DNA of 64,000 nucleotides from Paragordius varius (GCA_964247055.1 OZ176053.1:9734001-9798000), one strand, 5' to 3'. Positions 28,057 to 49,928 are shown, counted from the stretch's first letter. Numbers and translations: made by a program. The notes: generated by a model from the letters alone, not told the origin.

Positions 28057-28965
28057 ATGTTTATAATAAGCGCTGAATCAAAAATCTTTTCACGCATAAT
28101 CTACATTGTATTATTGCTAAATTTGATCGCGCAACTATTAGAATCTTTTCCGGGCACGAAACTTGGTTATTATATATGCTATTCCCAATATGTATTTCTT
28201 CTATTTTACATATGTGAGATAGTGGTAAAAATTAGTGTTAATGGGAAATCATTTTTCAAGGAATCATTTAACATAATTGATTTTGTTGTTATAACATTAA
28301 ATTTTGTACGATTTTTCTTTGTCGTCGAAAATATGCCAAAAATTTGTGATAATCCGTTAAACAATCATCTTACTTTGCATTCAAGTGCCATGGATATAAC
28401 TTTACACATTTTAGAAATTTGTCCTAGCCTTATTATAATTCGTCTGGCTAGATATTTAAAAACTTTAAGAATAGTTGCACACGTTTGCCTAAGATCATTG
28501 CGATCTCTAGGTGCTATATTGGCCCTTGTGTGCATATTTATTTACGTGTTTGCCGTAATTGGGGTTAGTTTATTTCAACATAAGAATGAACACTTTGGCG
28601 ATCTCTTTATGTCAGCTTTTACCATATTTGAAATATTAACGCTGGATGATTGGTTTGAGGAATATGCAACTTTATCAGATGATTCAACCAATTGGCCCAT
28701 TATTTTCTTTATTATAACGTGCATTATCATTGAATATTTTATCCTGTTTAATCTTTTCATTGCTGTGCTTGCGGATAATTTTCAATATGCCATGACAATA
28801 GCTTTGGAGGAAAGAGATAAAGTGGAAATGGAAAAGCTAATAAAGGAAGAAGAAACCCTAAATAAGTATATGGAAGATATTAGCGCAAATAGCCCATCCA
28901 CACAATCACCCAATGCGCTATCAAACGAACATCAAAAATTAGGTTTGTTTTATGACGATACATAG
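28057..28965 (+). CDS. CATSPER1: CatSper1-like single-domain (6-TM) Ca2+ channel alpha subunit
   Basis: 302-aa ORF with S1-S6, pore HFGDLFMSAFTIFEILTLDDW (TLDDW filter as in CatSper1), S6 IIIEYFILFNLFIAVLADNFQ (cf. CatSper1 IIIQYFIFLNLVITVLVDSFQ) and an acidic coiled-coil tail. The ends may be extended by splicing; a candidate 23-nt intron at 28943-28965 would remove the stop. Confidence 0.7.
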   Translation: MFIISAESKIFSRIIYIVLLLNLIAQLLESFPGTKLGYYICYSQYVFLLFYICEIVVKISVNGKSFFKESFNIIDFVVITLNFVRFFFVVENMPKICDNPLNNHLTLHSSAMDITLHILEICPSLIIIRLARYLKTLRIVAHVCLRSLRSLGAILALVCIFIYVFAVIGVSLFQHKNEHFGDLFMSAFTIFEILTLDDWFEEYATLSDDSTNWPIIFFIITCIIIEYFILFNLFIAVLADNFQYAMTIALEERDKVEMEKLIKEEETLNKYMEDISANSPSTQSPNALSNEHQKLGLFYDDT

Positions 28966-30910: not shown

Positions 30911-31661
30911 TGCGATAGATAAGTACTTTTATACAAATTAGACAAATAAATATATTAAATTTATCAATGCGAAAACGAAAACCTTTCTATACCACTCACT
31001 GTGCAACAAAATATGGGGTCAATTTTCTGGACTCAATTTTCTAAATATTTTCTGATTCCTTATAGTATTGTGATCAGATTTGCGTAAAAAATTTTTGTAC
31101 TTACCCAGATCGTTTTCGAGATATGGGACTTTTTCCATATTTGGACATATCCAAAATTTTCTTGTTTGTAAATATTTTTCGCTATGTAAACAAATAATAT
31201 GTGGCTTACATAAGTATTTTTACGAGAAATTATCATTTTATCTTCAAAATAAAAAAAAAATTTACGCAAAATATCCAATACTTTTTGTTTTAGGGGGCAA
31301 AAACCCTCAAAAATTGGGTAACTTAACATTTTTTCACACAAATATTTTTTATCAATTTATTAAAACAAAACAAATTTTATTATATGTTCTTGGATGTTAA
31401 TAATGTTTGTTCAAATATAAATATCACTTTGTAATAGTTTTGTGGACTTTTATTTTTAAAAATAAATTTAATTTTTACAGCTTTTTGTTGCTTTTTTATG
31501 TAAAAAATGATTTAATTTTAATCAGCTGCATATAATATATTCTTTATTTCATATGATATTTTTAAATATTTCCCACACTTAAATATACTCCATATCAGTT
31601 TTTTCATCAAGAAATATTATTATATACCCAAAATGTACAAAAAATATAATTATTACCCAAG

Positions 31662-31693
<32 letters not shown>

Positions 31694-31716
31694 ATTTTAA
31701 GATAGATAAAAATATT

Positions 31717-32246
31717 GTTTGCCATATATGTGGACAATACACAAAAAAACTAATAGTATAAACATTACCACTTACATAAAAAACTATTTTTTTATATTAT
31801 GGCGAACCTAGATTTGGGCCCCGAACACCGTATTTCGGACATGTAGCATTAGTTTAGGAGCATAGTACCACAAAACCGGACCTGGACTCCCTTGGGGTAT
31901 CCCTATGTGGCGAGAGCCAAAATCTAATTCTGAATGTTTTTGTGCAGTTCCAAAACCATTTCTTATTAACATTACCAAAAAAAACAAAAAACCTATCGAA
32001 TATCCAAACTTTTCCTGTGCAATTCGTCCTGTTTATTATTCCATTGACCTTCCCGTACCGTCATCTCCAACCATTCATATCGATTTATTTGATATGATGG
32101 ATGATACTGATTTGGAATTTTATCATCAAGATATAAAGGACACTAATAAATTAAGTGGCACTGAGGTGATATCCCTAATCAAAAAATTGCATCTCAAAAC
32201 GGTATTTTTAGAAAACCCTTCGAAAAAACCTATCGAAACAATATAA
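31717..32246 (+). pseudogene. N-terminal fragment of a Chapaev3-type (WREP-motif) transposase
   Basis: Across frameshifts and a stop: VCHICGQYT..NITTYIKNYF..YYG..IWAPNTVFRTCSISLGA*YHKTGPGLPWGIPMWREPKSNSECFC...KNKKPIEYPNFSCAIRPVYYSIDLPVP. This matches the C-x2-CG / WAPH / PMxWREP / YPxxxSAIRPV motifs I recall for Chapaev3-type transposases. The catalytic C-terminal half is absent. Confidence 0.75.
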
Positions 32247-32650
32247 ATTTAATTTGCGATTATATATATATGAATAAATAAATTATTATTTTATTTTTTC
32301 ACCTAATTTACTTTATATAAAGTCTAGATTAGATTATCCGTGTCTTAACATCTGTACACCAAAATATATTCTAAATATTCACTCTAATAACTGATTATAA
32401 TTTGGATTTGCATATAGTTTAATATATTATGATGAAATTATTTATTAATGGTATTATATTTTATTTAAACGTTTTTAATAAGATAAGGCATATCCAATTT
32501 TCTCTGCACAGTCGTCCATATTGAAAGCTAATCTATTAGCTGATGTGATATACAAATTGTTGCGATTGGGTACTTTGTCATGGTAATATAACTACCTGAT
32601 CGATATTTTGCTTTTATAAGAAATGAAAGAAATCAATAAAATACTTTTAT

Positions 32651-32830
32651 ATGGCAGACGTCAAAATCGAATTGGTAAATAATTTTAAATACTTGGGCGA
32701 TGTCATACATTGCTTAGGTAGAATAAACCAATCAGTTAAATATAGATCCCAACAGGCTGGGGTAAAATATCATTAACTTAAATTTATGTTTAAAAATAAA
32801 CACATATCAGCAAAAAACAAAGGTTTGATT
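32651..32830 (+). mobile_element. Non-LTR retrotransposon (RTE-like LINE) reverse transcriptase C-terminal fragment
   Basis: KIELVNNFKYLGDVIHCLGRINQSVKYRSQQAGVKYH*LKFMFKNKHISAKNK fits the LINE RT pattern IExVxxFKYLG...I..R...A...L...K.IS.K.K; contains an in-frame stop. Confidence 0.65.
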
Positions 32831-33319
32831 AGAGTTGTTGATAAGCGACAATAGTTTAAATTAAATGAAACGTTAACGACAAAAAACAATAATTACCGAA
32901 GAGACGATAACCCAAATAAAATTTATAAGAATATATGGTTAAAATTATTAAAAATATAATTTAGTATAGGAGGGTGCTTTCCTTTGATTTCCCTGTGGCA
33001 TACGTACTGTTCTAAACAAGTGAAATTTTATGGGTGATTACACTTTAATTAAAAAAGAATTCATTTCTGAGTATCGTAAAACTTCATCAGGGTAATAAGC
33101 TTCTTTAGATTGCACTCTTGACAAAGAGGGAATCATCCATATCCCTAAGTATATATATATAATGTATTTGATGGTATCAAGGTGTGTTCTTCTCTTATCC
33201 AAAAGGCAAAAGATTTTTCCGATTCAGAATTCAATTACAAATTTATATAAGAATCATTGTCCATTTCATATTATTTTAAAATATTTAAAAATGAAGCAAA
33301 CGAATCAACATATCTGACA
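32831..33319. repeat. ~490-bp direct repeat, copy 1 (copy 2 at 36385-36889), flanking the Helitron array
   Basis: AGAGTTGTTGATAAG...CGAATCAACATATCTGACA occurs twice; the two copies are nearly identical over their 3' two-thirds. Confidence 0.9.
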
Positions 33320-33479
33320 ACAATGACAATAACACGGGGTGCACCCCTTTGTACAATTGGTGAACCAATTGTCAGAGTACCTTGAGCTATATAAGTATTT
33401 TGGAAAAACCTTTTAAAACTTTTTCTGATAAAATTTTTATGATTGCAAATGTTTATATATATATATATATATATATATA

Positions 33480-36233
33480 CTAGCGTGAATCTCGTGCTGC
33501 TACGCAGCCCGAGGAAGTCCTTCGGACTTCTGGGGGGGGGGGAGGAAGGGGGGTTCGAAGTTTGGATTTGATTGGGTCTACCGGATTTCCTGTACCAGAT
33601 CACAAAGCCAGCATTTTTCATTTTTATAAATATATAGATTACCATAAATAATGTATTAATATCCATATATCTTTTAACATGCTATACATATGATAGATAC
33701 TCCTTACTCAGCATCTATCATCAAAGAAACGCTTGACTAAAATTTTTGCCTTTTTACAGGCAATACGAAAAATATTTATTGAATTTTTACGGTCTCATAC
33801 CTAGGGCGAAAAATCGATTAAAAAAATTATTTTTGTGGACTTTGTTTTTTGAAAAAGGTGGCATTTCACGGGGGGAGCGGGTAAATAGAGGGCCTAAATC
33901 AAAAAGGTGACTCGACTATGTTCGGCGCAATCGAAAATAAGTAAACAAAAATCATATTTGAAATTGAATGGTCCAACACGTTCTCCAAAAAATTAACTTT
34001 ACCCATTTTTCACACGGGGTGGGCCCAAACTGGGGACCTAATTCCAAAAAAGGGCGAAGCTATTGTCGGGGCATTCATTAATGATTAAATTTTTTCGATG
34101 TTTGGATTTGATTGGGTTCACCGGTTTTCCGGAAACAGATCACAAAGTTATATGAAAAATCAGTTTTTAGCGGGTAGCTCCCTCCCCAGCAGCTATCATC
34201 AAATAAACGGTAGACTAAAATTTTTGCCTTTTAACAGGGAATACGTGGAATCTTTATTGAATTTTTACGGTCTCATACCTAGGGCGAAAAATCGATTTAA
34301 AAAATTATTTTTGTGGACTTTGTTTTTTGAAAAAGGTGGCATTTCACGGAGGGAGCGGGTAAATAGAGGGCCTAAATCAAAAAAGTGACTCGACTATGGT
34401 CGGCGCAATCGAAAATAAGTAAACAAAAATCATATTTGAAATTGAATGGTCCAACACGTTCTCCAAAAAATTGACTTAACCCATTTTTCACACGGGGTGG
34501 GCCCAAACTGGGGACCTAATTCCAAAAAAGGGCGAAGCTATTGTCGGGGCATTCATTAATGATTATATTTTTTCGATATTTGGATTTGATTGGGTCTACC
34601 GGTTTTCCTGTACCAGATCACAAAGCCAGCATTTTCCATTTTTATAAATATATAGATTACCATAAATAATGTATTAATATCCATATATCTTTTAACATGC
34701 TATACATATGATAGATACTCCTTACTCAGCATCTATCATCAAAGAAACGCTTAACTAAAATTTTTGCCTTTTAACTTCTCGAATTTTTACAGTCTCATAC
34801 CGTGGGCAAAAAAATACAATCAAAAAAATATTTTTGTGGACTTTGTTTTTTTTTGAAAAAAATGGCATTTCACGGGGGGAGCGGGTAAATAGAGGGCCTA
34901 AATCAAAAAAGTGACTCGACTATGGTCGGCGCAATCGAAAATAAGTAAACAAAAATCATATTTGAAATTGAATGGTCCAACACGTTCTCCAAAAAATTGA
35001 CTTAACCCATTTTTCACACGGGATGGGCCCAAACTGGGGACCTAATTCCAAAAAAGGGCGAAGCTATTGTCGGGGCATTCATTAATGATTATATTTTTTC
35101 GAAGTTTGGATTTGATTGGGTCTACCGGATTTCCTGTACCAGATCACAAAGCCAGCATTTTTCATTTTTATAAATATATAGATTACCATAAATAATGTAT
35201 TAATATCCATATATCTTTTAACATGCTATACATATGATAGATACTCCTTACTCAGCATCTATCATCAAAGAAACGCTTGACTAAAATTTTTGCCTTTTTA
35301 CAGGCAATACGAAAAATATTTATTGAATTTTTACGGTCTCATACCTAGGGCGAAAAATCGATTAAAAAAATTATTTTTGTGGACTTTGTTTTTTGAAAAA
35401 GGTGGCATTTCACGGGGGGAGCGGGTAAATAGAGGGCCTAAATCAAAAAGGTGACTCGACTATGTTCGGCGCAATCGAAAATAAGTAAACAAAAATCATA
35501 TTTGAAATTGAATGGTCCAACACGTTCTCCAAAAAATTAACTTAACCCATTTTTCACACGGGGTGGGCCCAAACTGGGGACCTAATTCCAAAAAAGGGCG
35601 AAGCTATTGTCGGGGCATTCATTAATGATTAAATTTTTTCGATGTTTGGATTTGATTGGGTTCACCGGTTTTCCGGAAACAGATCACAAAGTTATATGAA
35701 AAATCAGTTTTTAGCGGGTAGCTCCTTAAGCAGCTATCATCAAATAAACGGTAGACTAAAATTTTTGCCTTTTAACAGGGAATACGTGGAATCTTTATTG
35801 AATTTTTACGGCCTCATACCTAGGGCGAAAAATCGATTTAAAAAATTATTTTTGTGGACTTTGTTTTTTGAAAAAGGTGGCATTTCACGGGGGAGCGGGT
35901 AAATAGAGGGCCTAAATCAAAAAAGTGGTTCGGCTATATTCAGCGCAATCGAAAATAAGTAAACAAAAATCATATTTGAAATTGAATGGTCCAACACGTT
36001 ATCCGGAAAATTGTCTCAAAAACACGATTTTTGTGGACTTCTGTTTTCAAAAAAAACCCGTTTTTCATACGGGGTGGGCCCGAACTGGGGGCCTATTTCA
36101 AAAAAAGGGCGAAGCTATTGTCGGGGCATTCATTAATGATTATATTTTTTTGATATTTGGATTTGATTGGGTCTACCGGTTTTCCTGTACCAGATCACAA
36201 AGCCAGTATTTTCCATTTTTATAAATATATAGA
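33480..36233 (-). mobile_element. Non-autonomous Helitron with tandemly amplified interior
   Basis: On the minus strand it starts A|TCTATATATTTATAAAAATG (36233) and ends with hairpins GAAGTCC-GAA-GGACTTC and GCTGC-GTA-GCAGC, 12 nt, then CTAG|T (33480). This is the canonical A|TC...hairpin-CTRR|T Helitron signature. Confidence 0.75.
33555..36233. repeat. Tandem array of ~480-540-bp units with higher-order (A-B-A')x2 structure
   Basis: Unit starts (T[C/T]GA..TTTGGATTTGATTGGG) at 33555, 34095, 34573, 35099, 35639 and 36150. Unit 1 matches unit 4 and unit 2 matches unit 5 (offset 1544 bp). Confidence 0.92.
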
Positions 36234-36384
36234 TTAAAATACTATTATGATAAGTTTTTTTACTGTAGGTTAGTGTTATTAAATTATTATATTAGAAATA
36301 AAAAGGAATTAAAAAAAATACCATACATAACCTGCGCTTGGGAAAGGACATTATTGTTTGATTTTTGGAACAGAGGTTTTTAAT

Positions 36385-36889
36385 AGAGTTGTTGATAAGT
36401 GACAATAGTTTTAATTAAATGAAACGTTAACGACAAAAAACAATTATGATTTAACCGAGCAGACGATAACCCAAATAAAATTTATAAGAATATATAATTA
36501 AAAGATTATTAAAAATAATTTAGTAGAAAAGGGTACTTATCTTTGATTTCCCTGTGGCATACGTACTGTTCTAAACAAGTGAAATTTTATGGGTGATTAC
36601 ACTTTAATTAAAAAAGAATTCATTTCTGAGTATCGTAAAACTTCATCAGGGTAATAAGCTTCTTTAGATTGCACTCTTGACAAAGAGGGAATCATCCATA
36701 TCCCTAAGTATATATATATATATATATATATAATGTATTGATGGTATCAAGGTGTGTTCTTCTCTTATCCAAAAGGCAAAAGATTTTTCCGATTCAGAAT
36801 TCAATTACAAATTTATATAAGAATCATTGTTCATTTCATATTATTTTAAAATATTTAAAAATGAAACAAACGAATCAACATATCTGACA
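36385..36889. repeat. Direct repeat copy 2 of 32831-33319
   Basis: See copy 1; carries a longer (TA)n run. Confidence 0.9.
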
Positions 36890-37614
36890 CCATATATGGT
36901 CAAAATTTAAAAATTTCAGATGAAAAAATGAAATTAGTATTTACAGCTGAGTAAAATAAATCATTTTTTACATTAAAAAAACAGCAAAAAAGCTGTAAAA
37001 ATTAAATTTATTTTTAAAAATTTAAGTCCACAAAGCTATTACAAAGTGATATTTATATTTGAACAAACATTATTAACATCCAAGAACATATAATAAAGTT
37101 TGTTTTGTTTTAATAAATTGATAAAAAATATTTGTGTGAAAAAATGTTAAGTTACCCAATTTTTGAGGGTTTTTGCCCCCTAAAACAAAAAGTATTGGAT
37201 ATTTTGAGTAAATTTTTTTTTAGTTTGAAGATAAATTGGTAATTTATTGTAAAAATACTTATGTAAGCCACATATTATTTGTTTACATAGCGAAAAATAT
37301 TTACAAACAAGAAAGTTTTGGATATGTCCAAATATGGAAAAAGTCCCATATCTCGAAAACGAGCTGGGTAAGTAAAAAAAATTTTTACTCAAATCTGATC
37401 ACAATACTATAAGGAATCAGAAAATATTTAGAAAATCGAGTCCAGAAAAAGTTGTGTCACAGTGCCACTATCAAGGGTTTATGACCCAATACATAATATT
37501 ATCTTCAATTAAAAAATATTAAAAACTGTAGAGATAGAAAATAAATAAAATTATAAAAAATTATACAATTTTTATAATTTCAAATAATTCCCAATAACTA
37601 ACATAGCGTTTAAA

Positions 37615-43600: not shown

Positions 43601-46600
43601 TGTTGTAATAGTCTGGTTGTTGGTTTGAATTGGCAAGTTTTTACAATAATTAATATCGCTTTTCTTGTGTTGTTCTCCATCAGATAAGAATTCATGATTT
43701 TTTGCATATACCAATTCAAAAGGGACATATGGCGGAGGCTGTTCTTCTACTAAATTTTTAGGTTCGAGTGCACTCTCAGTGAGAGATGATTGCAAAATAG
43801 GTGGACTAGAGTGTTTTGTAACTTTTTTACTACCGGCGGGTTTGAGCAAATACTTTGGGATGGATTTGAGCTTTTTATCACGCGTATTATCACAGTTATC
43901 ATTTTCAATCTTTTCAGTCTTAATGAGATGCTTCTTGTTATCATTGGTTGACTCGGTGACAGTATTGTTAGTGGATGATTTATGCTGATTTACCGTATAT
44001 GATGAATTCATCATGTCTAATTTCTCGTATGATTCATGTGAATATGAACAATTTTTGGCAGTATAAGATGTGTCCCTTTTAAACGCGTGAAAATCCTTTT
44101 TTGGTCCATTTGTGTGAATTGGTGTGAAATTTGCAAATTTCTAAAAATAAAATTTGGCAAACGAGAAATTAAAATTATTAGATAAACGCGCATCAATGCC
44201 AATAATTTGAACCCTAATTAATCAAAAATACCAGTTTATCTAAAACGAAAATATGATGTGGGATTAAAATAGGATAAGGGTCTAAGTATATTTTTCCTCT
44301 GGTCCATATATATATTAACTGGTAATTTATTATCACACAATAATTGTTTTTATTGTGGTTCAAAAAATTATTTTTGATGACAATTTTATTGAAAACAGAG
44401 TGTCCAATTATTTTATTACAATATGTCAAAATAGCAACAAAGATATAACTAAATAAACTGAAAATATGATTGTATACTATTTTTATCTAAAAAAATTAAT
44501 AAAAATATAATTTCATAATAATAATGGATTACATAATTGGTTAGTTAGCAGAGTATTAAAAATAAAAAATGATCAAAAACCATCCCAAAAAACTAACAGT
44601 TTTATCATAAAAAGTTATGGGCCAATCCCGGCTATAAGTTTCAATCCAATGACATATATATATCAATTTTTGTATTATTCCTTGTTTCGAAAATATTTGC
44701 GCATATACTAGACTTTAAATTGGTTTGAAACAATATACCTTAGGAAACATATTATTTTTATGTCAACCTTGGCGGTGCATATGAATGTGTTATTATATAC
44801 TGGCTTATGTTATGAAGTTAAAAAAATCTATCTAATTTAATATTTAATTTATTAATATAATTAACAAATATTTTTCTACCAGGAATTTAATTAATAAAAA
44901 TGTAAAATGTCGGCATTGAGACAATTTTATGACATTCAAATTTAATTCATTCATATGTGGGCCGAATAAAGTTGGCCCATATTTTTAAATTAAACTGGTT
45001 GGTAAAGCTCAACATGATGGTAAAAGTGCCGTTTTTTAAAGAAAAGAAAAATATCCGAAAATCATGTCTTTGAAATACATTTCCGGAAAAAGGTTGGTTC
45101 ATTCGAATTCAATAAAGATTTTTATTTTTTTAATCCACCGAATATAATAAGCCTACTTTTAAACCTAAAATGCCATTTCTTTCAAATAATCAAGTCCCTA
45201 AAAAATAATTGAGGCAGTTTTCGGCCAAGTTATAGCACTAAAACAAATGAACAATAATGATTTTAGTAATCGAAGTAACAAGGCAAAATTTTGGCGCGGC
45301 CTCTGGGCAGGGCTTAAAAAAATGGCCAACACATTAAAATAACGTGGAGCAAATTTTCGGTAAACGTATGAGACCATAGGGATTAAACAAAGGTTTTGGT
45401 TATTTCCCGTAAAAAAGGCAATAATTTAAATCAAGCGTTTTAGAAAGAGCTGGTTAGGGCTCAACCCTGTGAAAAATACGCCATTATAGAATGCGGCTAA
45501 ATAATATCAATAATGGTTTTTTAAGGATTTCCCGTATAAATGGAAAAAATTCAGACAAAAGCCTCGTTAAATTAACCCCTTATATGTTAAATACGCCACT
45601 ATACAAAAATAACATGGCTTAAAGAATTTTGAAAGCTTATGCGACCATATAAATTCGATATGAGATTAATTATTTTAAATAAAAATTTAGGAGCATTTTA
45701 AAATCAGAGGGCCGAACCCACCCTATGTTATATACGACTAAATCCTGGTAGGCTAAATCTATCCCTGTTTATTTTTTGATAAAAAACATATTATCGATTT
45801 ACTAAAGATATTGTCGATTTAGTCCCAAAGCGACGCGTGTTAGGCCACAACTAGTGATCGATAAATATAAATAAATAAGTAGAATGTGACCGGTATTTTT
45901 CTCTAAATGATCATGTTAAAACTAAATTTTATTTGCATGTTAATTATAACTTGAAATATTGGTCAATATATAAAATATAAAAAAAATTCTAGATACTCTG
46001 TTACGAGTAAAAAGTATTAGGCCAAAGCAAGAGCGCTAATTGGCTTAAAGCCGAATAATTTATTATTAACTAGATTTTACATTGTTTTAATCCCCTTTTT
46101 ACAAGATCATTCATTATTCATTAATGCTTGGAAAAAAATTATTTTCAGCCAATTCAAAATGTTAATTAGTAAAATAAGCAAGATAACATATATATAAATT
46201 TGAAAATTTATAAAAAAACACATATTATATGGACTGAGTAGTTGATACAAGTTCAAATTCATTAAACAATAATATTTTTACACCAGACTAAATAAAATTC
46301 ATTTATATAGTTAAACTCAGGTTAAGGGTACAAACAAACAAACAACAATGAACTCTTGACATCTGCAAAAAAATGAAGTACTTACCATGGCTTTAAAAAC
46401 AACACATTATTATGTAAACATTTTTAAGGTGGGTGAGTATATAAATTAATTGAGTATAGTTTCAACACCTACCAAAAAAGCTTAAAAAAATGATATTGAG
46501 ATTTAGGGCCATGTGAATGAGCTAAAAAAATTGGCTTAATCACATGGATCATGGCTTATGAGGCAAAATATGTTTAAAGGAGGTGAATGAGATTTTGAGG

Positions 46601-48170
46601 CGGAAATTTCAAAACTATTTTAAAAAACAAATTATAATGAATATGGATTACACTTCTCGGCATCTATTTGTGGGTCTTATTGAAAAGTATTTTTTATAAT
46701 TATTTATAAATAACAATCTTTTTTCGAATGGATAAATATAATAGGGGTGAAATTTTTCCATATAAAGTATAGAAAATGTGCAACATTAGTGCATACATTA
46801 GAATAAAGCTTGACCTTACTCAAGGAATAGAATTTCTTTAAAAATGTTACGGCATAATGACTTTATTTTATTTCATCACAAATCACCTTTCAAATGCGTT
46901 ATTATATATGTTTAAACACAAAATAAATGTTATTTATTTATCAAGAGTTTTATATATTATTGATAAATCATCTTGGTTGAGAAGCTTATGCTCTGATAAT
47001 CATAATTACAAGCAAAAACAAACCTAAAAATTTAGAGAATTTGAAACTCGTGTAAAAATATAGGCGAGTGTCCTGTTTCTTATTTAATGGAAGTCAACAA
47101 CCTATATATGGGCATGTGTAATTACTTGTTTTGTGTATCTAAACTTGCAGTAGGTTAGAATGTTCTTTTTAAGTTATTCTTTTATTAAAAAAGCCTAAAA
47201 TATATTAACTAGGAGAGAAAAATTAAATTTCCCATTACTAGCTGGCCTGAAAAATAAATAATTTGATACATGTTGAAATTTTTATAATCTACCATATACA
47301 TATTTTGAATTTACTTTTGTTAGGTAATACAGTTTTCATATTCCAAAATTCTTATCAATTCTCGAAAATCTTTTGTAATAACCTTAATCCTAAAAAAAAC
47401 AGTTTCAAAATTTTTTCCATCTCAATAGGATGAGACAAACTTAAAACATATGTTTATACGTTTTCACTTGCTAATTATCTTAAAAGTGGGTCGTAAAGGC
47501 ATTAAAACCGGTCGGACTTAACCCTATGTATAAATGTATGTTAAACCATCTATTAAACAAACTTTATTTTCGTAACTTTTTTAATAAATAAATTTTAAAT
47601 TAACATTTTAATTAAACAAGCGTAAAACAAAAAATTTGATTTTATAAATAGGTTAAAGTGTAAACGTTTGTAGTTACACTATAATTATATTAATATGTAT
47701 GCACATTAAATTGTTAAAGGCGGTTTACTTACTAAATTTTATTAGCAATAAATTTTATTCGGATTGGTTTAAATAAAAAATGATATCATTTTTACAACCG
47801 TTGTTAAGTTCTTTGATCTAATAGAGTGTAGGTATGCGTAAGTAATAAATATGTGCTAAAGATATCTAATGTAATCATGATCAAGTCTGTTCAGTTAGAC
47901 TTACTACACAGCAATGAGTTTCGAAAAAAAGGAAGGATATTTTTACAGTGTACTTTTCTTGTCCATAAAATACGATCAATAAAAAAATGGTTCGTGACAA
48001 TATTATCATGTGTCCGCCTATTAACAGACACATTTAGAGGCCACACAGGTCTCATAGACAAACATAACACACACTTAACATTCAAAAATATTTGAACAAC
48101 GCTATATATAATTATTATTGGAAATAAATTTATAAAAAGAGTTACCTATCCTATAAATAAATTAAAATAG

Positions 48171-48207
<37 letters not shown>

Positions 48208-49928
48208 ACCGAATTAATATCAGGGTCCTTAACAACTCCTACATTTAAATCGTGGAAAGAGATATTCTTGAAATCATTTTCTAAGAATTTAAGTTTAAAT
48301 TCCAATAGCTTTTTATCAATTTCATTGGGTGTTTGAAGTGAATCGTTTGCATCAGTATTTTTTAGCAACTCATTTTCATCAAGGTTTATTGTGTTAAATT
48401 TTGAATAGGAACGCTTAAATGTGTTGGGTTGGGACAATAGTATGTTTGAATGGCTCGCATTTGGGGACGAGAGTGATGTCGTGTTGCCCTGTTTATCAAT
48501 CCTCGATATAGTAGGATGTCGCGAAAATAAACCTTTGTCGGTTAAATTGCAACAATGGTAAACTGGAAGTATGTAACATCTCCACCGTTCAGAATCAAAA
48601 CCCCAATGACAGACCCGTTTTTCAGCTTTTCGGTGAGAATGACAAACAAATTGTTGAGGTGACAATAGTAATTTACAATGGGTACACTGAATGCACGGGG
48701 TGGCGGGTGCAACGTATAATTTGGGGAAAACGGTTCCAACACAACGACCAAAACATTCATGAAAAATGGTAAAAGAATAATCGTTGCTGCATAAATTATT
48801 AGAATTGGATGAAACATGTGTACTCTCAGCCACGATCCCAGAATCAACTAAAGGCTCCTTTTTCCTAGAGCCATGATTGGATTTTAAATAATTTAAGTTG
48901 CTACTGTCTACATTATTTACATCAGTAATGGTAGATGATGAATGTTCATCATGGAACTCATAAATCAAATGTTTTGAATCATTAGTAGGCGATATAAGTT
49001 TTTGTGGGACTATTTCATTAGAACTTAATTTAAGCCGCTTCGATTGAAAATAGGAGGAATAGTGATCGTCTATTTGTCTATTTTCATTGCTTATGTGCTG
49101 ATGCCCATCTCTTAAAAGATAATCACAAAGTCGTTCAGAATCGCTTTTAGTGATCAAACCACAATCTGTAGCAACATATGAAATAATAAAAAATTGTTTT
49201 AACGCAGCCAATTGTTTATCATTGCACCGGGAACAATATATGTGTAGTGCATCACAAGCAGCATTGATATCAATTAAAGTAAAATCTTTAAGCACTGTGT
49301 TAAGAATTTGCGGTAAACACAAACGCTTTTCTCCGCCCACTTCAAAGCATGCGATAACGAACCCTTCTACCGTTGTGAAACTTATTAAAGTTGAGTTTGG
49401 TGAAATAAAAAATTGATTCACAGCGTCAAGTTTTCTATCATATTGAATAGATTTGGGAAACGTTTTTGTATCAACATCTTCGTTAGGAATAGCACCTTCC
49501 AAAAAATGTGTAATAGTTTTTACGATGTAATCATCATGAGTGATTAATTCGGGATTTTTATCACAAAGCTGTGTATCAATTGTAGTCAAGTGTGAAAAAG
49601 AATCAGGGTTGTTTTTGAGTGTTTGATTTTGTCTTAATTCGCATTGATCCCAATTTAATGCGGGTTTGGTGGATCCAATTTTTCCATTTTCCGGATAAAC
49701 GCCAATATTGACCAATTGTTTATAGGCATGATATAAACCATGAGCAGTATTTTGTCTAACGGTAGTTATTTTATCCAGCTCAACCGATTTCTTATAAGGT
49801 TCAATACATGTTCCTATACTTTGGGTAAATGAAGGGGGAATATAAGAATGAGATGTTATAATAGCGTTGCATTTTGATTCTTGCTGTTCATAACGTGTTT
49901 GTTGCCTCGCCTTTGAATGACTGTGCAT
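40673..49928 (-). CDS. SKI: Ski/SnoN family transcriptional co-repressor, ~1085 aa, 5 exons
   Basis: Exons 49928-48210, 44140-43131, 41465-41368, 41249-41115 and 40968-40673 (3258 nt, phase-consistent). Dachshund-homology domain CFEVGGEKRLCLPQILNTVLKDF...CGLITKSDSERLC. SAND/Smad4-binding domain HECFGRC...CIQCTHC...FVCHSH...CHWGFDSERWRCYI. Confidence 0.9.
41862..43005. mobile_element. ~1.1-kb degenerate foldback element in Ski intron 2
   Basis: Arms of ~500 bp are inverted copies (GTGTTAACATAGCATAA / TTATGCTATGTTAACAC; CAAAACATCCAATA / TATTGGATGTTTTG). The left end AACTGTGTGACAAAAATGGGG resembles CACTGTGCAACAAAATATGGGG of the 30997 element. Confidence 0.7.

What the first reader, a model, noticed from the sequence alone, without database searches (positions are those of the whole stretch)
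30992..37469. Transposon with RSS-like ends: CAC heptamer, 5-bp TSD and an 11-bp (23/12) end asymmetry, paired with a Chapaev3-type transposase
Seen: the left end reads CACTGTG-[23 nt]-CTGGACTCA, the right end reads CACTGTG-[12 nt]-CTGGACTCG, and the flanks carry an exact 5-bp TSD (CCACT). The 11-nt offset (one helical turn) is robust. The absolute 23/12 count depends on where the conserved block is taken to start; it is 19/8 if the shared TTTT is included. Known: V(D)J RSS are CACAGTG plus a 12- or 23-nt spacer plus a nonamer, and RAG, ProtoRAG and Transib make 5-bp TSDs with CAC termini. The coding remnant here looks Chapaev3-type (WREP), a group I recall having shorter TSDs. Inference: this may be a lineage bridging Chapaev3 and Transib/RAG that uses 12/23-like asymmetric end recognition. 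The conserved block is not the ACAAAAACC nonamer.
Basis: partly seen in the sequence, partly recalled or inferred. Interest (0 to 1): 0.85.

Follow-up and report, generated by a model that had tools for sequence, protein, structure and literature searches.

The report
Chapaev3 transposon relic, 12/23-like ends
This is a decayed, non-autonomous Chapaev3-type DNA transposon whose two ends carry the same recognition block 12 and 23 bases from a CAC heptamer; eight other Chapaev3 elements show the same one-helical-turn offset, so an RSS-like end asymmetry looks like a family trait in these relatives of RAG1/Transib, while this copy's 5-base target duplication is unusual for the group.

Summary
The element spans 30997-37464 and ends in CACTGTG...CACAGTG. 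It is flanked by an exact 5-bp duplication, CCACT (30992-30996 and 37465-37469). The block CTGGACTC starts at nt 31 of the left end and nt 20 of the right end, giving spacers of 23 and 12.

The "ends" are the tips of ~575-bp inverted arms that are 95.8% identical. The 11-bp difference is a single gap.

The coding remnant (31717-32243) is truly Chapaev3-type. It matches a 91-sequence Chapaev3 profile (E 2e-10) and carries the WREP motif printed for Garfield_BM.

The offset is probably not a private indel. I recovered eight other Chapaev3 elements, seven of them with intact transposases that are 55-67% identical to each other. In these the shared subterminal block starts near nt 20 in the 5' end and near nt 30 in the 3' end, a 9-10 bp offset. 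The offset is significant in six and weak in two. A Chapaev-like control element shows no offset.

The 5-bp TSD departs from the TWA 3-bp TSD reported for ~33 Chapaev3 families and seen here in four elements. It rests on one copy.

"Bridging lineage" is overstated, because kinship of Chapaev3 with Transib and RAG1 is already published. A predicted Chapaev3 structure hits the RAG1 core best. Whether any 12/23 rule operates is untested.

The parts
30992..30996 (.). Left copy of the 5-bp target-site duplication, CCACT
   Evidence: identical to 37465-37469 and directly abutting the CAC terminus.
30997..31003 (+). Left terminal heptamer CACTGTG. It is the first 7 nt of the 12-mer CACTGTGCAACA, which fits the Chapaev3 terminal pattern CAC-N4-N[A/T]ACA.
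   Evidence: the 12-mer is identical to both ends of Chapaev3 family C (L025-L030) and 12/13 identical to Merrow_PM.
31004..31026 (+). Long spacer (23 nt to CTGGACTC, 19 nt to TTTTCTGG). It contains the 11 nt absent from the right end.
   Evidence: single 11-bp gap; the layout matches the long 3' end of family C (CACTGTGCAACA, then an A-rich stretch, then TTTTCTGGAC).
31027..31034 (+). Left copy of the shared subterminal block CTGGACTC, starting at nt 31 of the end
   Evidence: best diagonal -11, shuffle p = 0.0003.
31023..31053 (+). Cluster of three direct TTTTCT hexamers (nt 27, 41 and 52 of the left end). Candidate transposase-binding repeats.
   Evidence: three in 31 bp against about 1 per kb per strand in the window.
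30997..31571 (+). Left inverted arm (~575 bp)
   Evidence: 95.8% identical to the right arm over nt 46-500.
31717..32243 (+). Degenerate N-terminal remnant of a Chapaev3 transposase: the Chapa-type zinc-finger region (VCHICG..., WAPN..., GIPMWREPKSNSECF-C, YPNFSCAIRPV, LPVP), followed by a weaker hand-matched stretch resembling the family's 'LNDLVRDL' region. It is read in three frames and interrupted by stops.
   Evidence: 113 hits, best E 7.5e-9. Chapaev3 HMM E 2.1e-10, profile positions 74-143, with a co-linear weak piece at 51-64. Garfield_BM prints IWREPKDHITDCYFC. The LNDLVRDL-like resemblance is by eye and lies outside the profile match.
32627..32773 (+). Short stop-free stretch that resembles the tail of a non-LTR reverse transcriptase. 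Probably foreign to the element.
   Evidence: read by eye. Pfam found nothing. Weak evidence.
32826..36892 (+). Interior block bounded by ~500-bp direct repeats (32826-33321 and 36376-36892, TG...CA ends, no TSD). It encloses about five tandem units of 478-540 bp (33550-36250). It could be an LTR-like insert or a duplication, and is not transposase-related.
36890..37464 (-). Right inverted arm (~575 bp)
37438..37445 (-). Right copy of the block CTGGACTC, starting at nt 20 of the end. This is the position the block has in the short (5') ends of the other Chapaev3 elements.
37446..37457 (-). Short spacer (12 nt to CTGGACTC)
37458..37464 (-). Right terminal heptamer (CACAGTG on the + strand)
37465..37469 (.). 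Right copy of the 5-bp target-site duplication, CCACT

Best explanation
The feature is a non-autonomous, internally rearranged relic of a Chapaev3-type cut-and-paste DNA transposon. Chapaev3 belongs to the CMC/'CMCT' group, the relatives of Transib and RAG1 that carry a Chapa zinc finger.

Shown:
- CAC...GTG termini and a 5-bp TSD.
- ~575-bp inverted arms.
- A decayed N-terminal transposase remnant and no catalytic core, so it could only have moved using a transposase supplied in trans.
- An interior filled by unrelated repeats.
- The two ends differ in the distance between the terminal heptamer and a shared block: 12 nt at the right end and 23 nt at the left.
- The same geometry recurs in other Chapaev3 elements: 12-mer CAC-N4-N[A/T]ACA, then the block starting near nt 20 in the 5' end and near nt 30 in the 3' end. 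The block sequence itself differs from family to family.

Inferred:
- The block and the TTTTCT repeats are transposase-binding sites.
- A Chapaev3 transpososome pairs one short-spacer end with one long-spacer end, one helical turn apart. This is analogous to 12/23 RSS pairing by RAG and to the 12/23-like TIR pairs of some Transibs.
- Cleavage at the CAC is by a RAG1/Transib-like DDE core.
- This element kept unlike tips even though its arms are otherwise near-identical. That fits a need for one end of each kind.
- The 5-bp duplication implies a 5-bp staggered strand transfer at this insertion. The enzyme was either a Chapaev3 lineage with a wider stagger than the usual 3 bp, or a Transib-type enzyme acting on similar ends. 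Which one is unknown.
For: Ends and TSD.

Chapaev3 identity of the remnant:
- an exhaustive search gave 113 hits, all of the WREP...DCYFC family.
- full-length ~555-aa relatives.
- a 91-sequence profile gives E 2e-10 and finds no other piece in the window.
- the Garfield_BM Chapaev3 transposase prints the same motifs, plus C(2)C/LH/H(4)H.

Chapaev3 identity of the ends:
- the left end matches the 3' end of family C (CACTGTGCAACA, A-rich stretch, TTTTCTGGAC). CTGATTC and CTTATAG motifs are also shared.
- Merrow_PM reads CACTGTGTAACAA.

Family-wide offset:
- The best diagonal between ends is +10 in L008 (p = 0.0007), L006 (0.0027), L017 (0.0003) and L031 (0.0007).
- L010 is also +10 (32/48 matches, p = 0.0015).
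- L002, which holds the closest protein relative of the remnant, is +9 (p = 0.0007).
- L025 and L033 show only short matches at +9/11 and +10.
- The window element is -11 (p = 0.0003).
- The intact transposases are 55-67% identical pairwise.

Other support:
- Control: a Chapaev-like long-TIR element (L001 11550-14471, TSD TGGT) has its ends in register.
- The tips of the window's arms are more divergent than the rest (p = 0.008).
- Fold: an AlphaFold2 model of an intact Chapaev3 transposase (pLDDT 84.6) matches the RAG1 core best (E 2e-6, TM 0.41-0.46). P element transposase follows (E 1.3e-5), then HzTransib (E 5.6e-5, TM 0.48 normalised to the target's length) and Hermes (E 0.013).
Against: - Only one copy of this element could be examined. 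Neither the 5-bp TSD nor the 23/12 spacing could be tabulated for its own family.
- The TSD contradicts the A-TWA-T rule reported for ~33 Chapaev3 families (PMC4079192). I saw that rule as direct repeats in L002, L008, L010 and L033.
- The orientation is reversed. In all eight comparators the short spacer lies at the ORF's 5' end, but here the N-terminal remnant lies next to the long-spacer end.
- Two of the eight comparators (L025, L033) give no significant diagonal. L010 is significant by one statistic only.
- The comparators are related elements, so the shared geometry could be inherited rather than selected.
- No experiment shows that spacer length matters for any Chapaev3.
- The interior clearly holds foreign DNA, so the remnant could in principle be foreign too.
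Confidence: 0.7

Rival explanations
1. Private indel. The element once had two identical long arms, and the 11-bp difference is a random insertion or deletion acquired after insertion. It would have no bearing on end recognition.
For: Only one copy was seen. The difference is a single gap in arms that are otherwise 95.8% identical. The 12/23 count depends on where the block is taken to start.
Against: Eight other Chapaev3 elements have a 9-10 bp offset at the same place, with the block near nt 20 versus nt 30. The window's short end has its block at exactly nt 20. The long end resembles the long 3' end of family C. Substitutions are also concentrated in nt 8-45 (p = 0.008).
Confidence: 0.1
2. 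Composite or cross-mobilised element. The ends were used by a Transib-type (5-bp TSD) transposase. Either this is really a Transib-family non-autonomous element carrying a Chapaev3 fragment as a passenger, or a Transib enzyme acted on Chapaev3 ends that look alike (CAC heptamer with 12/23-like spacing).
For: A 5-bp and relatively GC-rich TSD (CCACT, in a ~27% GC window) is the Transib/RAG hallmark (PMC1131882, preprint 10.64898/2026.08.26.747230). TWA is the Chapaev3 hallmark (PMC4079192). The interior does hold foreign sequence. Some Transib families have 12/23-like TIR pairs (PMC1131882).
Against: No Transib-like coding sequence is present in the element. The terminal 12-mer, the TTTTCTGGAC block and further motifs match Chapaev3 family C. 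No Chapaev3 terminus lies next to the remnant, as a nested insertion would require. The remnant sits where a transposase N-terminus is expected, about 720 bp inside an end and pointing inward.
Confidence: 0.15
3. Not a transposon insertion. It would be a local inverted duplication whose boundaries happen to carry CAC/GTG and a 5-bp direct repeat.
For: The very long inverted arms and the repeat-rich interior are untypical of the ~2.0-2.8-kb Chapaev3 elements recovered here.
Against: The arms end exactly at CACTGTG/CACAGTG and are flanked by an exact 5-mer (chance about 1e-3). The termini match Chapaev3 ends from unrelated sources. A Chapaev3 transposase remnant lies inside.
Confidence: 0.03

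Closest known systems
Chapaev3 DNA transposons (Merrow, Garfield, Conan and Repbase Chapaev3 families; CMC/'CMCT' group)
   Same: The transposase remnant has the Chapa-type zinc-finger region with the WREP...DCYFC motif. The short/long spacer geometry is shared with eight elements examined here.
   Different: The TSD is 5-bp CCACT, not a 3-bp TWA between A and T. The inverted arms are ~575 bp, whereas the other elements share only the 12-mer plus short blocks. The long spacer lies beside the N-terminal remnant, the reverse of the comparators. There is no catalytic core. The element is 6.5 kb with a foreign repeat-rich interior.
Transib transposons with 12/23-like TIR pairs (Transib5, Transib2_AG, TransibN1-3_AG; Kapitonov and Jurka 2005, PMC1131882)
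   Same: 5-bp TSD, a CAC heptamer, and two ends whose second conserved block is offset by about one helical turn.
   Different: The coding remnant is Chapaev3-type, not Transib-type. The second block here is CTGGACTC preceded by a T-run, not an A-rich nonamer. Transib transposases lack the Chapa/NZD domain (preprint 10.64898/2026.01.24.700457).
V(D)J recombination signal sequences and RAG1/RAG2
   Same: Heptamer CACTGTG versus RSS CACAGTG, with the CAC conserved. Spacers are 12 and 23. RAG transposition makes a 5-bp TSD. The predicted Chapaev3 core resembles the RAG1 core best among solved structures. [quoted passage not shown]
   Different: There is no ACAAAAACC-like nonamer and no RAG2 partner. 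No nonamer-binding domain was shown. A 12/23 rule has been demonstrated only for RAG. Sequence similarity of Chapaev3 to RAG1 is undetectable by phmmer.
ProtoRAG and invertebrate RAG-like transposons
   Same: CAC termini, 5-bp TSDs, and asymmetric TIRs in amphioxus ProtoRAG (27/31, per PMC8355894).
   Different: Those encode RAG1L plus RAG2L. Most RAGL TIRs are reported as symmetric and thought insensitive to spacer asymmetry (PMC7204232). Here the difference is 11 nt rather than 4.

Membership tests
Chapaev3 (CMC/CMCT) | N-terminal Chapa-type zinc-finger region of the transposase (C-x2-C ... WAPH-x2-C-x2-C ... WREP-x-DH-x2-DCYFC ... YP-x4-A-x-RPV) | tested here: met
   The remnant 31717-32243 is degenerate, with stops, frameshifts and lost Cys residues. 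It matches a Chapaev3 profile at E 2.1e-10 and gave 113 family hits. The motif is printed for Garfield_BM.
Chapaev3 (CMC/CMCT) | DDE core with C(2)C, LH and H(4)H motifs | tested here: not met
   No core remnant exists anywhere in the element or the window. This is expected for a deletion derivative, so membership rests on the ends and the N-terminal remnant.
Chapaev3 (CMC/CMCT) | 5'-CAC ... GTG-3' termini.
   CACTGTGCAACA (left) and CACTGTGACACA (right). The left 12-mer is identical to family C.
Chapaev3 (CMC/CMCT) | 3-bp TWA target-site duplication inserted between A and T (PMC4079192) | tested here: not met
   The flanks are CCACT/CCACT (5 bp), with no TWA reading possible. Comparators L002, L008, L010 and L033 do show direct TAA or TTA.
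Chapaev3 (CMC/CMCT) | Shared subterminal block offset by about one helical turn between the ends. This trait is proposed here and is not a published criterion. | tested here: met
   The window element has an 11-nt offset. The eight comparators have 9-10 nt (six significant). The control element has none.
Transib | Transib-type (RAG1-core-like, ~700 aa) transposase or its remnant | tested here: not met
   The only coding remnant is Chapaev3-type.
Transib | 5-bp target-site duplication | tested here: met
   CCACT on both sides, in one copy only.
Transib | 38-bp RSS-like terminus: CACAATG-like heptamer, spacer, A-rich nonamer (PMC1131882) | tested here: inconclusive
   A heptamer is present (CACTGTG). 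The second block is T-run + CTGGACTC, not an A-rich nonamer. No Transib TIR sequences were available to align.
RAG / RSS system | Obligatory pairing of one 12-spacer and one 23-spacer signal (12/23 rule) | not testable with these tools
   Only the geometry is seen. Testing needs excision or transposition assays with 12/23, 12/12 and 23/23 end pairs.

The most novel reading that the evidence does not exclude
A short/long spacer asymmetry of one helical turn (about 12 versus 22-23 nt between the CAC heptamer and a second recognition block) may be a conserved, functional property of Chapaev3 transposons as a whole. These are the lineage that also shares the Chapa/NZD zinc finger with RAG1. If so, a 12/23-type pairing geometry would predate the divergence of Chapaev3, Transib and RAG rather than being an oddity of a few Transibs. 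The element in this window would belong to a Chapaev3 sub-lineage that also integrates with the RAG/Transib-like 5-bp stagger.
Probability: 0.3. Interest if true: 0.8.

Novelty: new variant of a known kind. Interest (0 to 1): 0.62.

Why it matters
Where the 12/23 rule of V(D)J recombination came from is an open question. Published accounts accessible here say that 12/23-like ends are known only in a few Transib families (PMC8355894). They also say invertebrate RAG-like transposons are mostly symmetric and probably insensitive to spacer asymmetry (PMC7204232).

Chapaev3 elements are abundant, often intact, and horizontally transferred. Their transposases share a zinc-finger domain with the RAG1 N-terminus and, by predicted fold, resemble the RAG1 core. 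If they generally need one short-spacer and one long-spacer end, the rule becomes testable in a simple single-protein transposon system. Its origin could then be placed deeper in the CMC/Transib/RAG clade.

The element in the window is itself a dead relic. Its value is that it pointed to the pattern. It also pairs Chapaev3 ends with a 5-bp duplication, which, if typical of its family, would be a new TSD class for Chapaev3.

Tried and rejected
Searches for more copies of this element all failed:
- 37-mer with 3 mismatches in the window.
- blastn of the element against the window; only (TA)n hits.
- Scan of the window for CAC...GTG TIR pairs.
- Exact TIR 26-28-mers in metagenome contigs, twice, and in prokaryotic genome contigs.
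- Protein search with an ORF lying in the TIR.
- Exact look-up of ten window ORFs.
The source genome is evidently not in the protein collection. Its SKI-like ORF finds only 62-68% identical relatives over about 15% of its length. The host species therefore stays unidentified; it is a ~27% GC metazoan.

Other dead ends:
- Pfam finds nothing for the remnant, for full-length relatives, or for other interior stop-free stretches.
- phmmer of a Chapaev3 core and a Chapa domain against PDB sequences finds nothing. Only the fold comparison links them to RAG1.
- Rfam finds nothing in the window.
- I tried to define the ends of the interrupted Chapaev3 pseudogene in L001 and abandoned it as ambiguous.
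- L002 and L003 turned out to be the same locus at 99.9% identity.
- No 5' end was found for L007 and no ends for L005.

Readings considered and rejected:
- A 3-bp or 4-bp TSD reading of the flanks. No register gives one.
- A nested Chapaev3 insertion. No CAC terminus with TWA lies upstream of the remnant.
- A C-terminal transposase remnant near the right arm. None was found.

Full report
OBSERVATION

- The left flank ends ...ctataCCACT and the element begins CACTGTGCAACAAAATATGGGGTCAATTTTCTGGACTCA.
- The element ends ...CACAGTG and is followed by CCACTatcaa.
- Read inward, the right end is CACTGTGACACAACTTTTTCTGGACTCG.
The element proper is 30997-37464 (6468 bp), and the TSD copies are 30992-30996 and 37465-37469.
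- The duplication is exactly 5 bp. No other register gives a 3- or 4-bp duplication.
- The counts heptamer + 23 + CTGGACTC (left) and heptamer + 12 + CTGGACTC (right) are right.

- From nt 46 to 500 the arms show 433 matches, 19 mismatches and 3 gap columns (95.8%).
- From nt 8 to 45 they show 22 matches, 5 mismatches and one 11-bp gap.
- The tips are significantly more different than the rest (Fisher p = 0.008).
- So CTGGACTC is not an isolated conserved island. It is simply where a long alignment resumes. That is why, from this element alone, only the 11-nt difference is robust.

Each end also holds three same-strand TTTTCT hexamers within 31 bp. The background is about one per kb per strand.

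WHAT THE ELEMENT CONTAINS

The only coding remnant is at 31717-32243 on the + strand. It is read in three frames with stops.
- An exhaustive search of 1.84 billion representatives gave 113 hits (best E 7.5e-9). All carry the motif ...MPF.VPMIWREP.DH..DCYFC...YP..PSA.RPV.H...LPVP.
- Full-length ~555-aa relatives are numerous.
- A profile built from 91 of them matches 31866-32243 at E 2.1e-10 (profile positions 74-143). A co-linear weak piece lies at 31812-31862 (positions 51-64). Nothing else in the 64-kb window matches, and there is no C-terminal remnant.
- The supplement of Zhang et al. 2014 prints the Chapaev3 transposase Garfield_BM. It has the same ...IWREPKDHITDCYFC... region and the C(2)C, LH and H(4)H motifs.

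The rest of the interior is unrelated.
- A possible reverse-transcriptase tail lies at 32627-32773.
- A 4-kb block (32826-36892) is bounded by ~500-bp direct repeats and filled with 478-540-bp tandem units.

The element is therefore non-autonomous and old enough to have been invaded or rearranged.

ARE THE ENDS CHAPAEV3 ENDS?

Yes, as far as can be judged.
- Merrow_PM, a Chapaev3 family, is printed with ends CACTGTGTAACAA-TTTT and, read inward, CACTATGTAACACATTTTT.
- I fetched loci encoding intact relatives and defined their ends. Three families were defined by comparing multiple insertions: P0316 (L009-L016), P0298 (L017-L024) and P0309 (L025-L030).
- Five further elements were defined by terminal motif plus flanks: L002, L006, L008, L031 and L033.
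- All begin with a 12-mer CAC-N4-N[A/T]ACA.
- Family P0309 has CACTGTGCAACA at both ends. Its 3' end reads CACTGTGCAACA, an A-rich stretch, then TTTTCTGGAC. That is the layout and largely the sequence of the window's left end. CTGATTC and CTTATAG motifs are shared as well.

This argues that the ends and the remnant belong together. So does the position of the remnant, about 720 bp inside an end, pointing inward, with no separate Chapaev3 terminus beside it.

THE OFFSET IS NOT PECULIAR TO THIS COPY

This is the main new result.

In the comparators the two ends share the 12-mer in register. A second block then starts near nt 20 in the 5' end and near nt 30 in the 3' end. That gives 12 and 22 nt after the heptamer.
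- P0316 family: TGCCTTCT.
- P0298 family: TGCTTC.
- L008: TGTCCCAT.
- L006: TCTATCC, then AAAAATAGT.
- L031: TGTTTCC.
- L033: TTTCCC.
- L002: AAAAATACG, then TGTTTTAT, at +9.

I computed the best ungapped diagonal between nt 13-60 of the two ends, with shuffles.
- It is +10 in L008 (p = 0.0007), L006 (0.0027), L017 (0.0003) and L031 (0.0007).
- It is +9 in L002 (0.0007).
- L010 is also +10. It is weak by this statistic (p = 0.09), but shows 32/48 matches at p = 0.0015 on the whole diagonal.
- L025 and L033 give no significant diagonal. They show only short matches at the same offset.
- Gapped alignment independently puts a net 9-10-nt insertion in the 3' end in six of the eight.
- The seven intact transposases are only 55-67% identical to one another.
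- The block sequence differs between families while its two positions stay fixed.
- A Chapaev-like long-TIR element with a 4-bp TSD (L001 11550-14471) has its ends in register (43/47 at +1). The offset is therefore not a general property of CAC...GTG elements.

The window element fits this pattern. Its block starts at nt 20 in the right end and nt 31 in the left end (offset 11, p = 0.0003).

It is striking that the two arms are otherwise 96% identical over half a kilobase, yet the tips remain unlike. I read that as a hint, not proof, that one end of each kind is needed for mobility.

WHAT DOES NOT FIT

1. The TSD. Zhang et al. report TWA between A and T for about 33 Chapaev3 families. I see direct TAA or TTA in L002, L008, L010 and L033. 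The window has CCACT. It is 5 bp and relatively GC-rich in a ~27% GC window, which is the Transib/RAG signature (PMC1131882). It rests on one insertion. A recent preprint shows TSD length varying (5, 3, 2 bp) among closely related Transibs (10.64898/2026.08.26.747230). Kojima (PMC12730594) gives 2-5 bp for the whole 'CMCT' clade. A Chapaev3 sub-lineage with a 5-bp stagger is therefore plausible, and so is mobilisation by a Transib-type enzyme. I cannot decide between them.

2. The orientation. In all eight comparators the short spacer is at the ORF's 5' end. In the window the N-terminal remnant lies beside the long-spacer end. Given the duplicated arms, a rearrangement is likely, but this is unexplained.

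RELATION TO TRANSIB AND RAG

- Kapitonov and Koonin 2015 list Chapaev3 as a clade of the Transib superfamily. They note that the Chapa zinc finger is shared with the RAG1 N-terminus.
- Kojima 2025 groups EnSpm, Mirage, Chapaev and Transib with RAG1 by the C(2)C/H(3-4)H motifs.
- 12/23-like TIR pairs are described for Transib5 and four Anopheles families.

My own tests:
- phmmer of a Chapaev3 core or Chapa domain finds nothing in the PDB.
- An AlphaFold2 model of the intact transposase P0246 (57-sequence alignment, pLDDT 84.6) matches the RAG1 core best (E 2e-6, TM 0.41-0.46). P element transposase follows (E 1.3e-5), then HzTransib (E 5.6e-5, TM 0.48 normalised to the target's length). Hermes is far behind (E 0.013).

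So it is reasonable that a Chapaev3 enzyme works like RAG1/Transib. 'A lineage bridging them' is not what this element shows.

I found no paper in the searchable library that mentions Chapaev together with heptamer and spacer. One review states that 12/23 asymmetry outside V(D)J is known only in some Transibs. The original Chapaev3 description (Repbase Reports 2008) is not in the library, so I cannot exclude that the offset was noted there.

VERDICT

- The element itself is an ordinary dead relic of a known kind with an unusual TSD.
- The end asymmetry it displays appears to be a conserved feature of Chapaev3 transposons. That feature is relevant to the origin of the 12/23 rule and is directly testable.
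- The main limits are a single copy of this family, an unidentified source genome, eight comparators, and no functional data.

Noticed in passing
window 32826-36892: Direct repeats of ~500 bp (32826-33321 and 36376-36892, 94-98% identical, TG...CA ends, no flanking duplication) enclose about five tandem units of 478-540 bp. This could be an LTR-like non-autonomous insert or a segmental duplication inside the transposon.
   Followed up: partly
window 31717-32243 relative to the ends: The N-terminal transposase remnant lies beside the long-spacer end. In all eight comparator Chapaev3 elements the ORF starts beside the short-spacer end. This is unexplained and may relate to the origin of the 575-bp arms.
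   Followed up: partly
L025, L026, L028, L029, L030 (family of P0309), flanks of both ends: In five of five contigs the three bases next to each end are TWA, but in inverted rather than direct relation (TAA...TTA or TTA...TAA). The flanks mirror each other for 5-7 nt (for example TTGATTA|element|TAATCAA). L031 shows the same. This could reflect a palindromic target preference, chimeric assembly, or something unusual about integration in this family.
   Followed up: no
L001 11550-14471 (GCA_024704765.1): A CACGGG...CCCGTG element with ~760-bp inverted arms and a 4-bp TSD (TGGT). It encodes a 499-aa protein and is inserted into the C-terminal part of a Chapaev3 pseudogene. Its ends are in register, and it served as the negative control.
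   Followed up: partly
window 48165-49928 (-) and 28057-28962 (+): Two host ORFs. One is a SKI/SNO/DAC plus c-SKI SMAD4-binding protein (Pfam E 1e-33 and 7e-29). The other is an ion-transport/polycystin-type channel segment (E 3e-33). The best database relatives of the SKI ORF are only 62-68% identical over ~15% of its length. The source is therefore a ~27% GC metazoan absent from the protein collection.
   Followed up: partly
window 45570-45665 (-): A very weak match (E 0.63) of the Chapaev3 profile to ...IWSHK...CYFC. This is probably chance.
   Followed up: no
proteins P0045, P0023, P0234-P0254 and others: The pseudoscorpion Cordylochernes scorpioides assembly has many annotated 'genes' that are chimeras of Chapaev3 transposase with Tc1/mariner, reverse transcriptase, helicase and other domains. 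These are probably gene-model artefacts over nested transposons.
   Followed up: no
(L009-L030): Identical 552-563-aa Chapaev3 transposases recur on contigs from many unrelated sequencing runs and metagenomes. This is consistent with the recurrent horizontal transfer reported for this group (PMC4079192).
   Followed up: no
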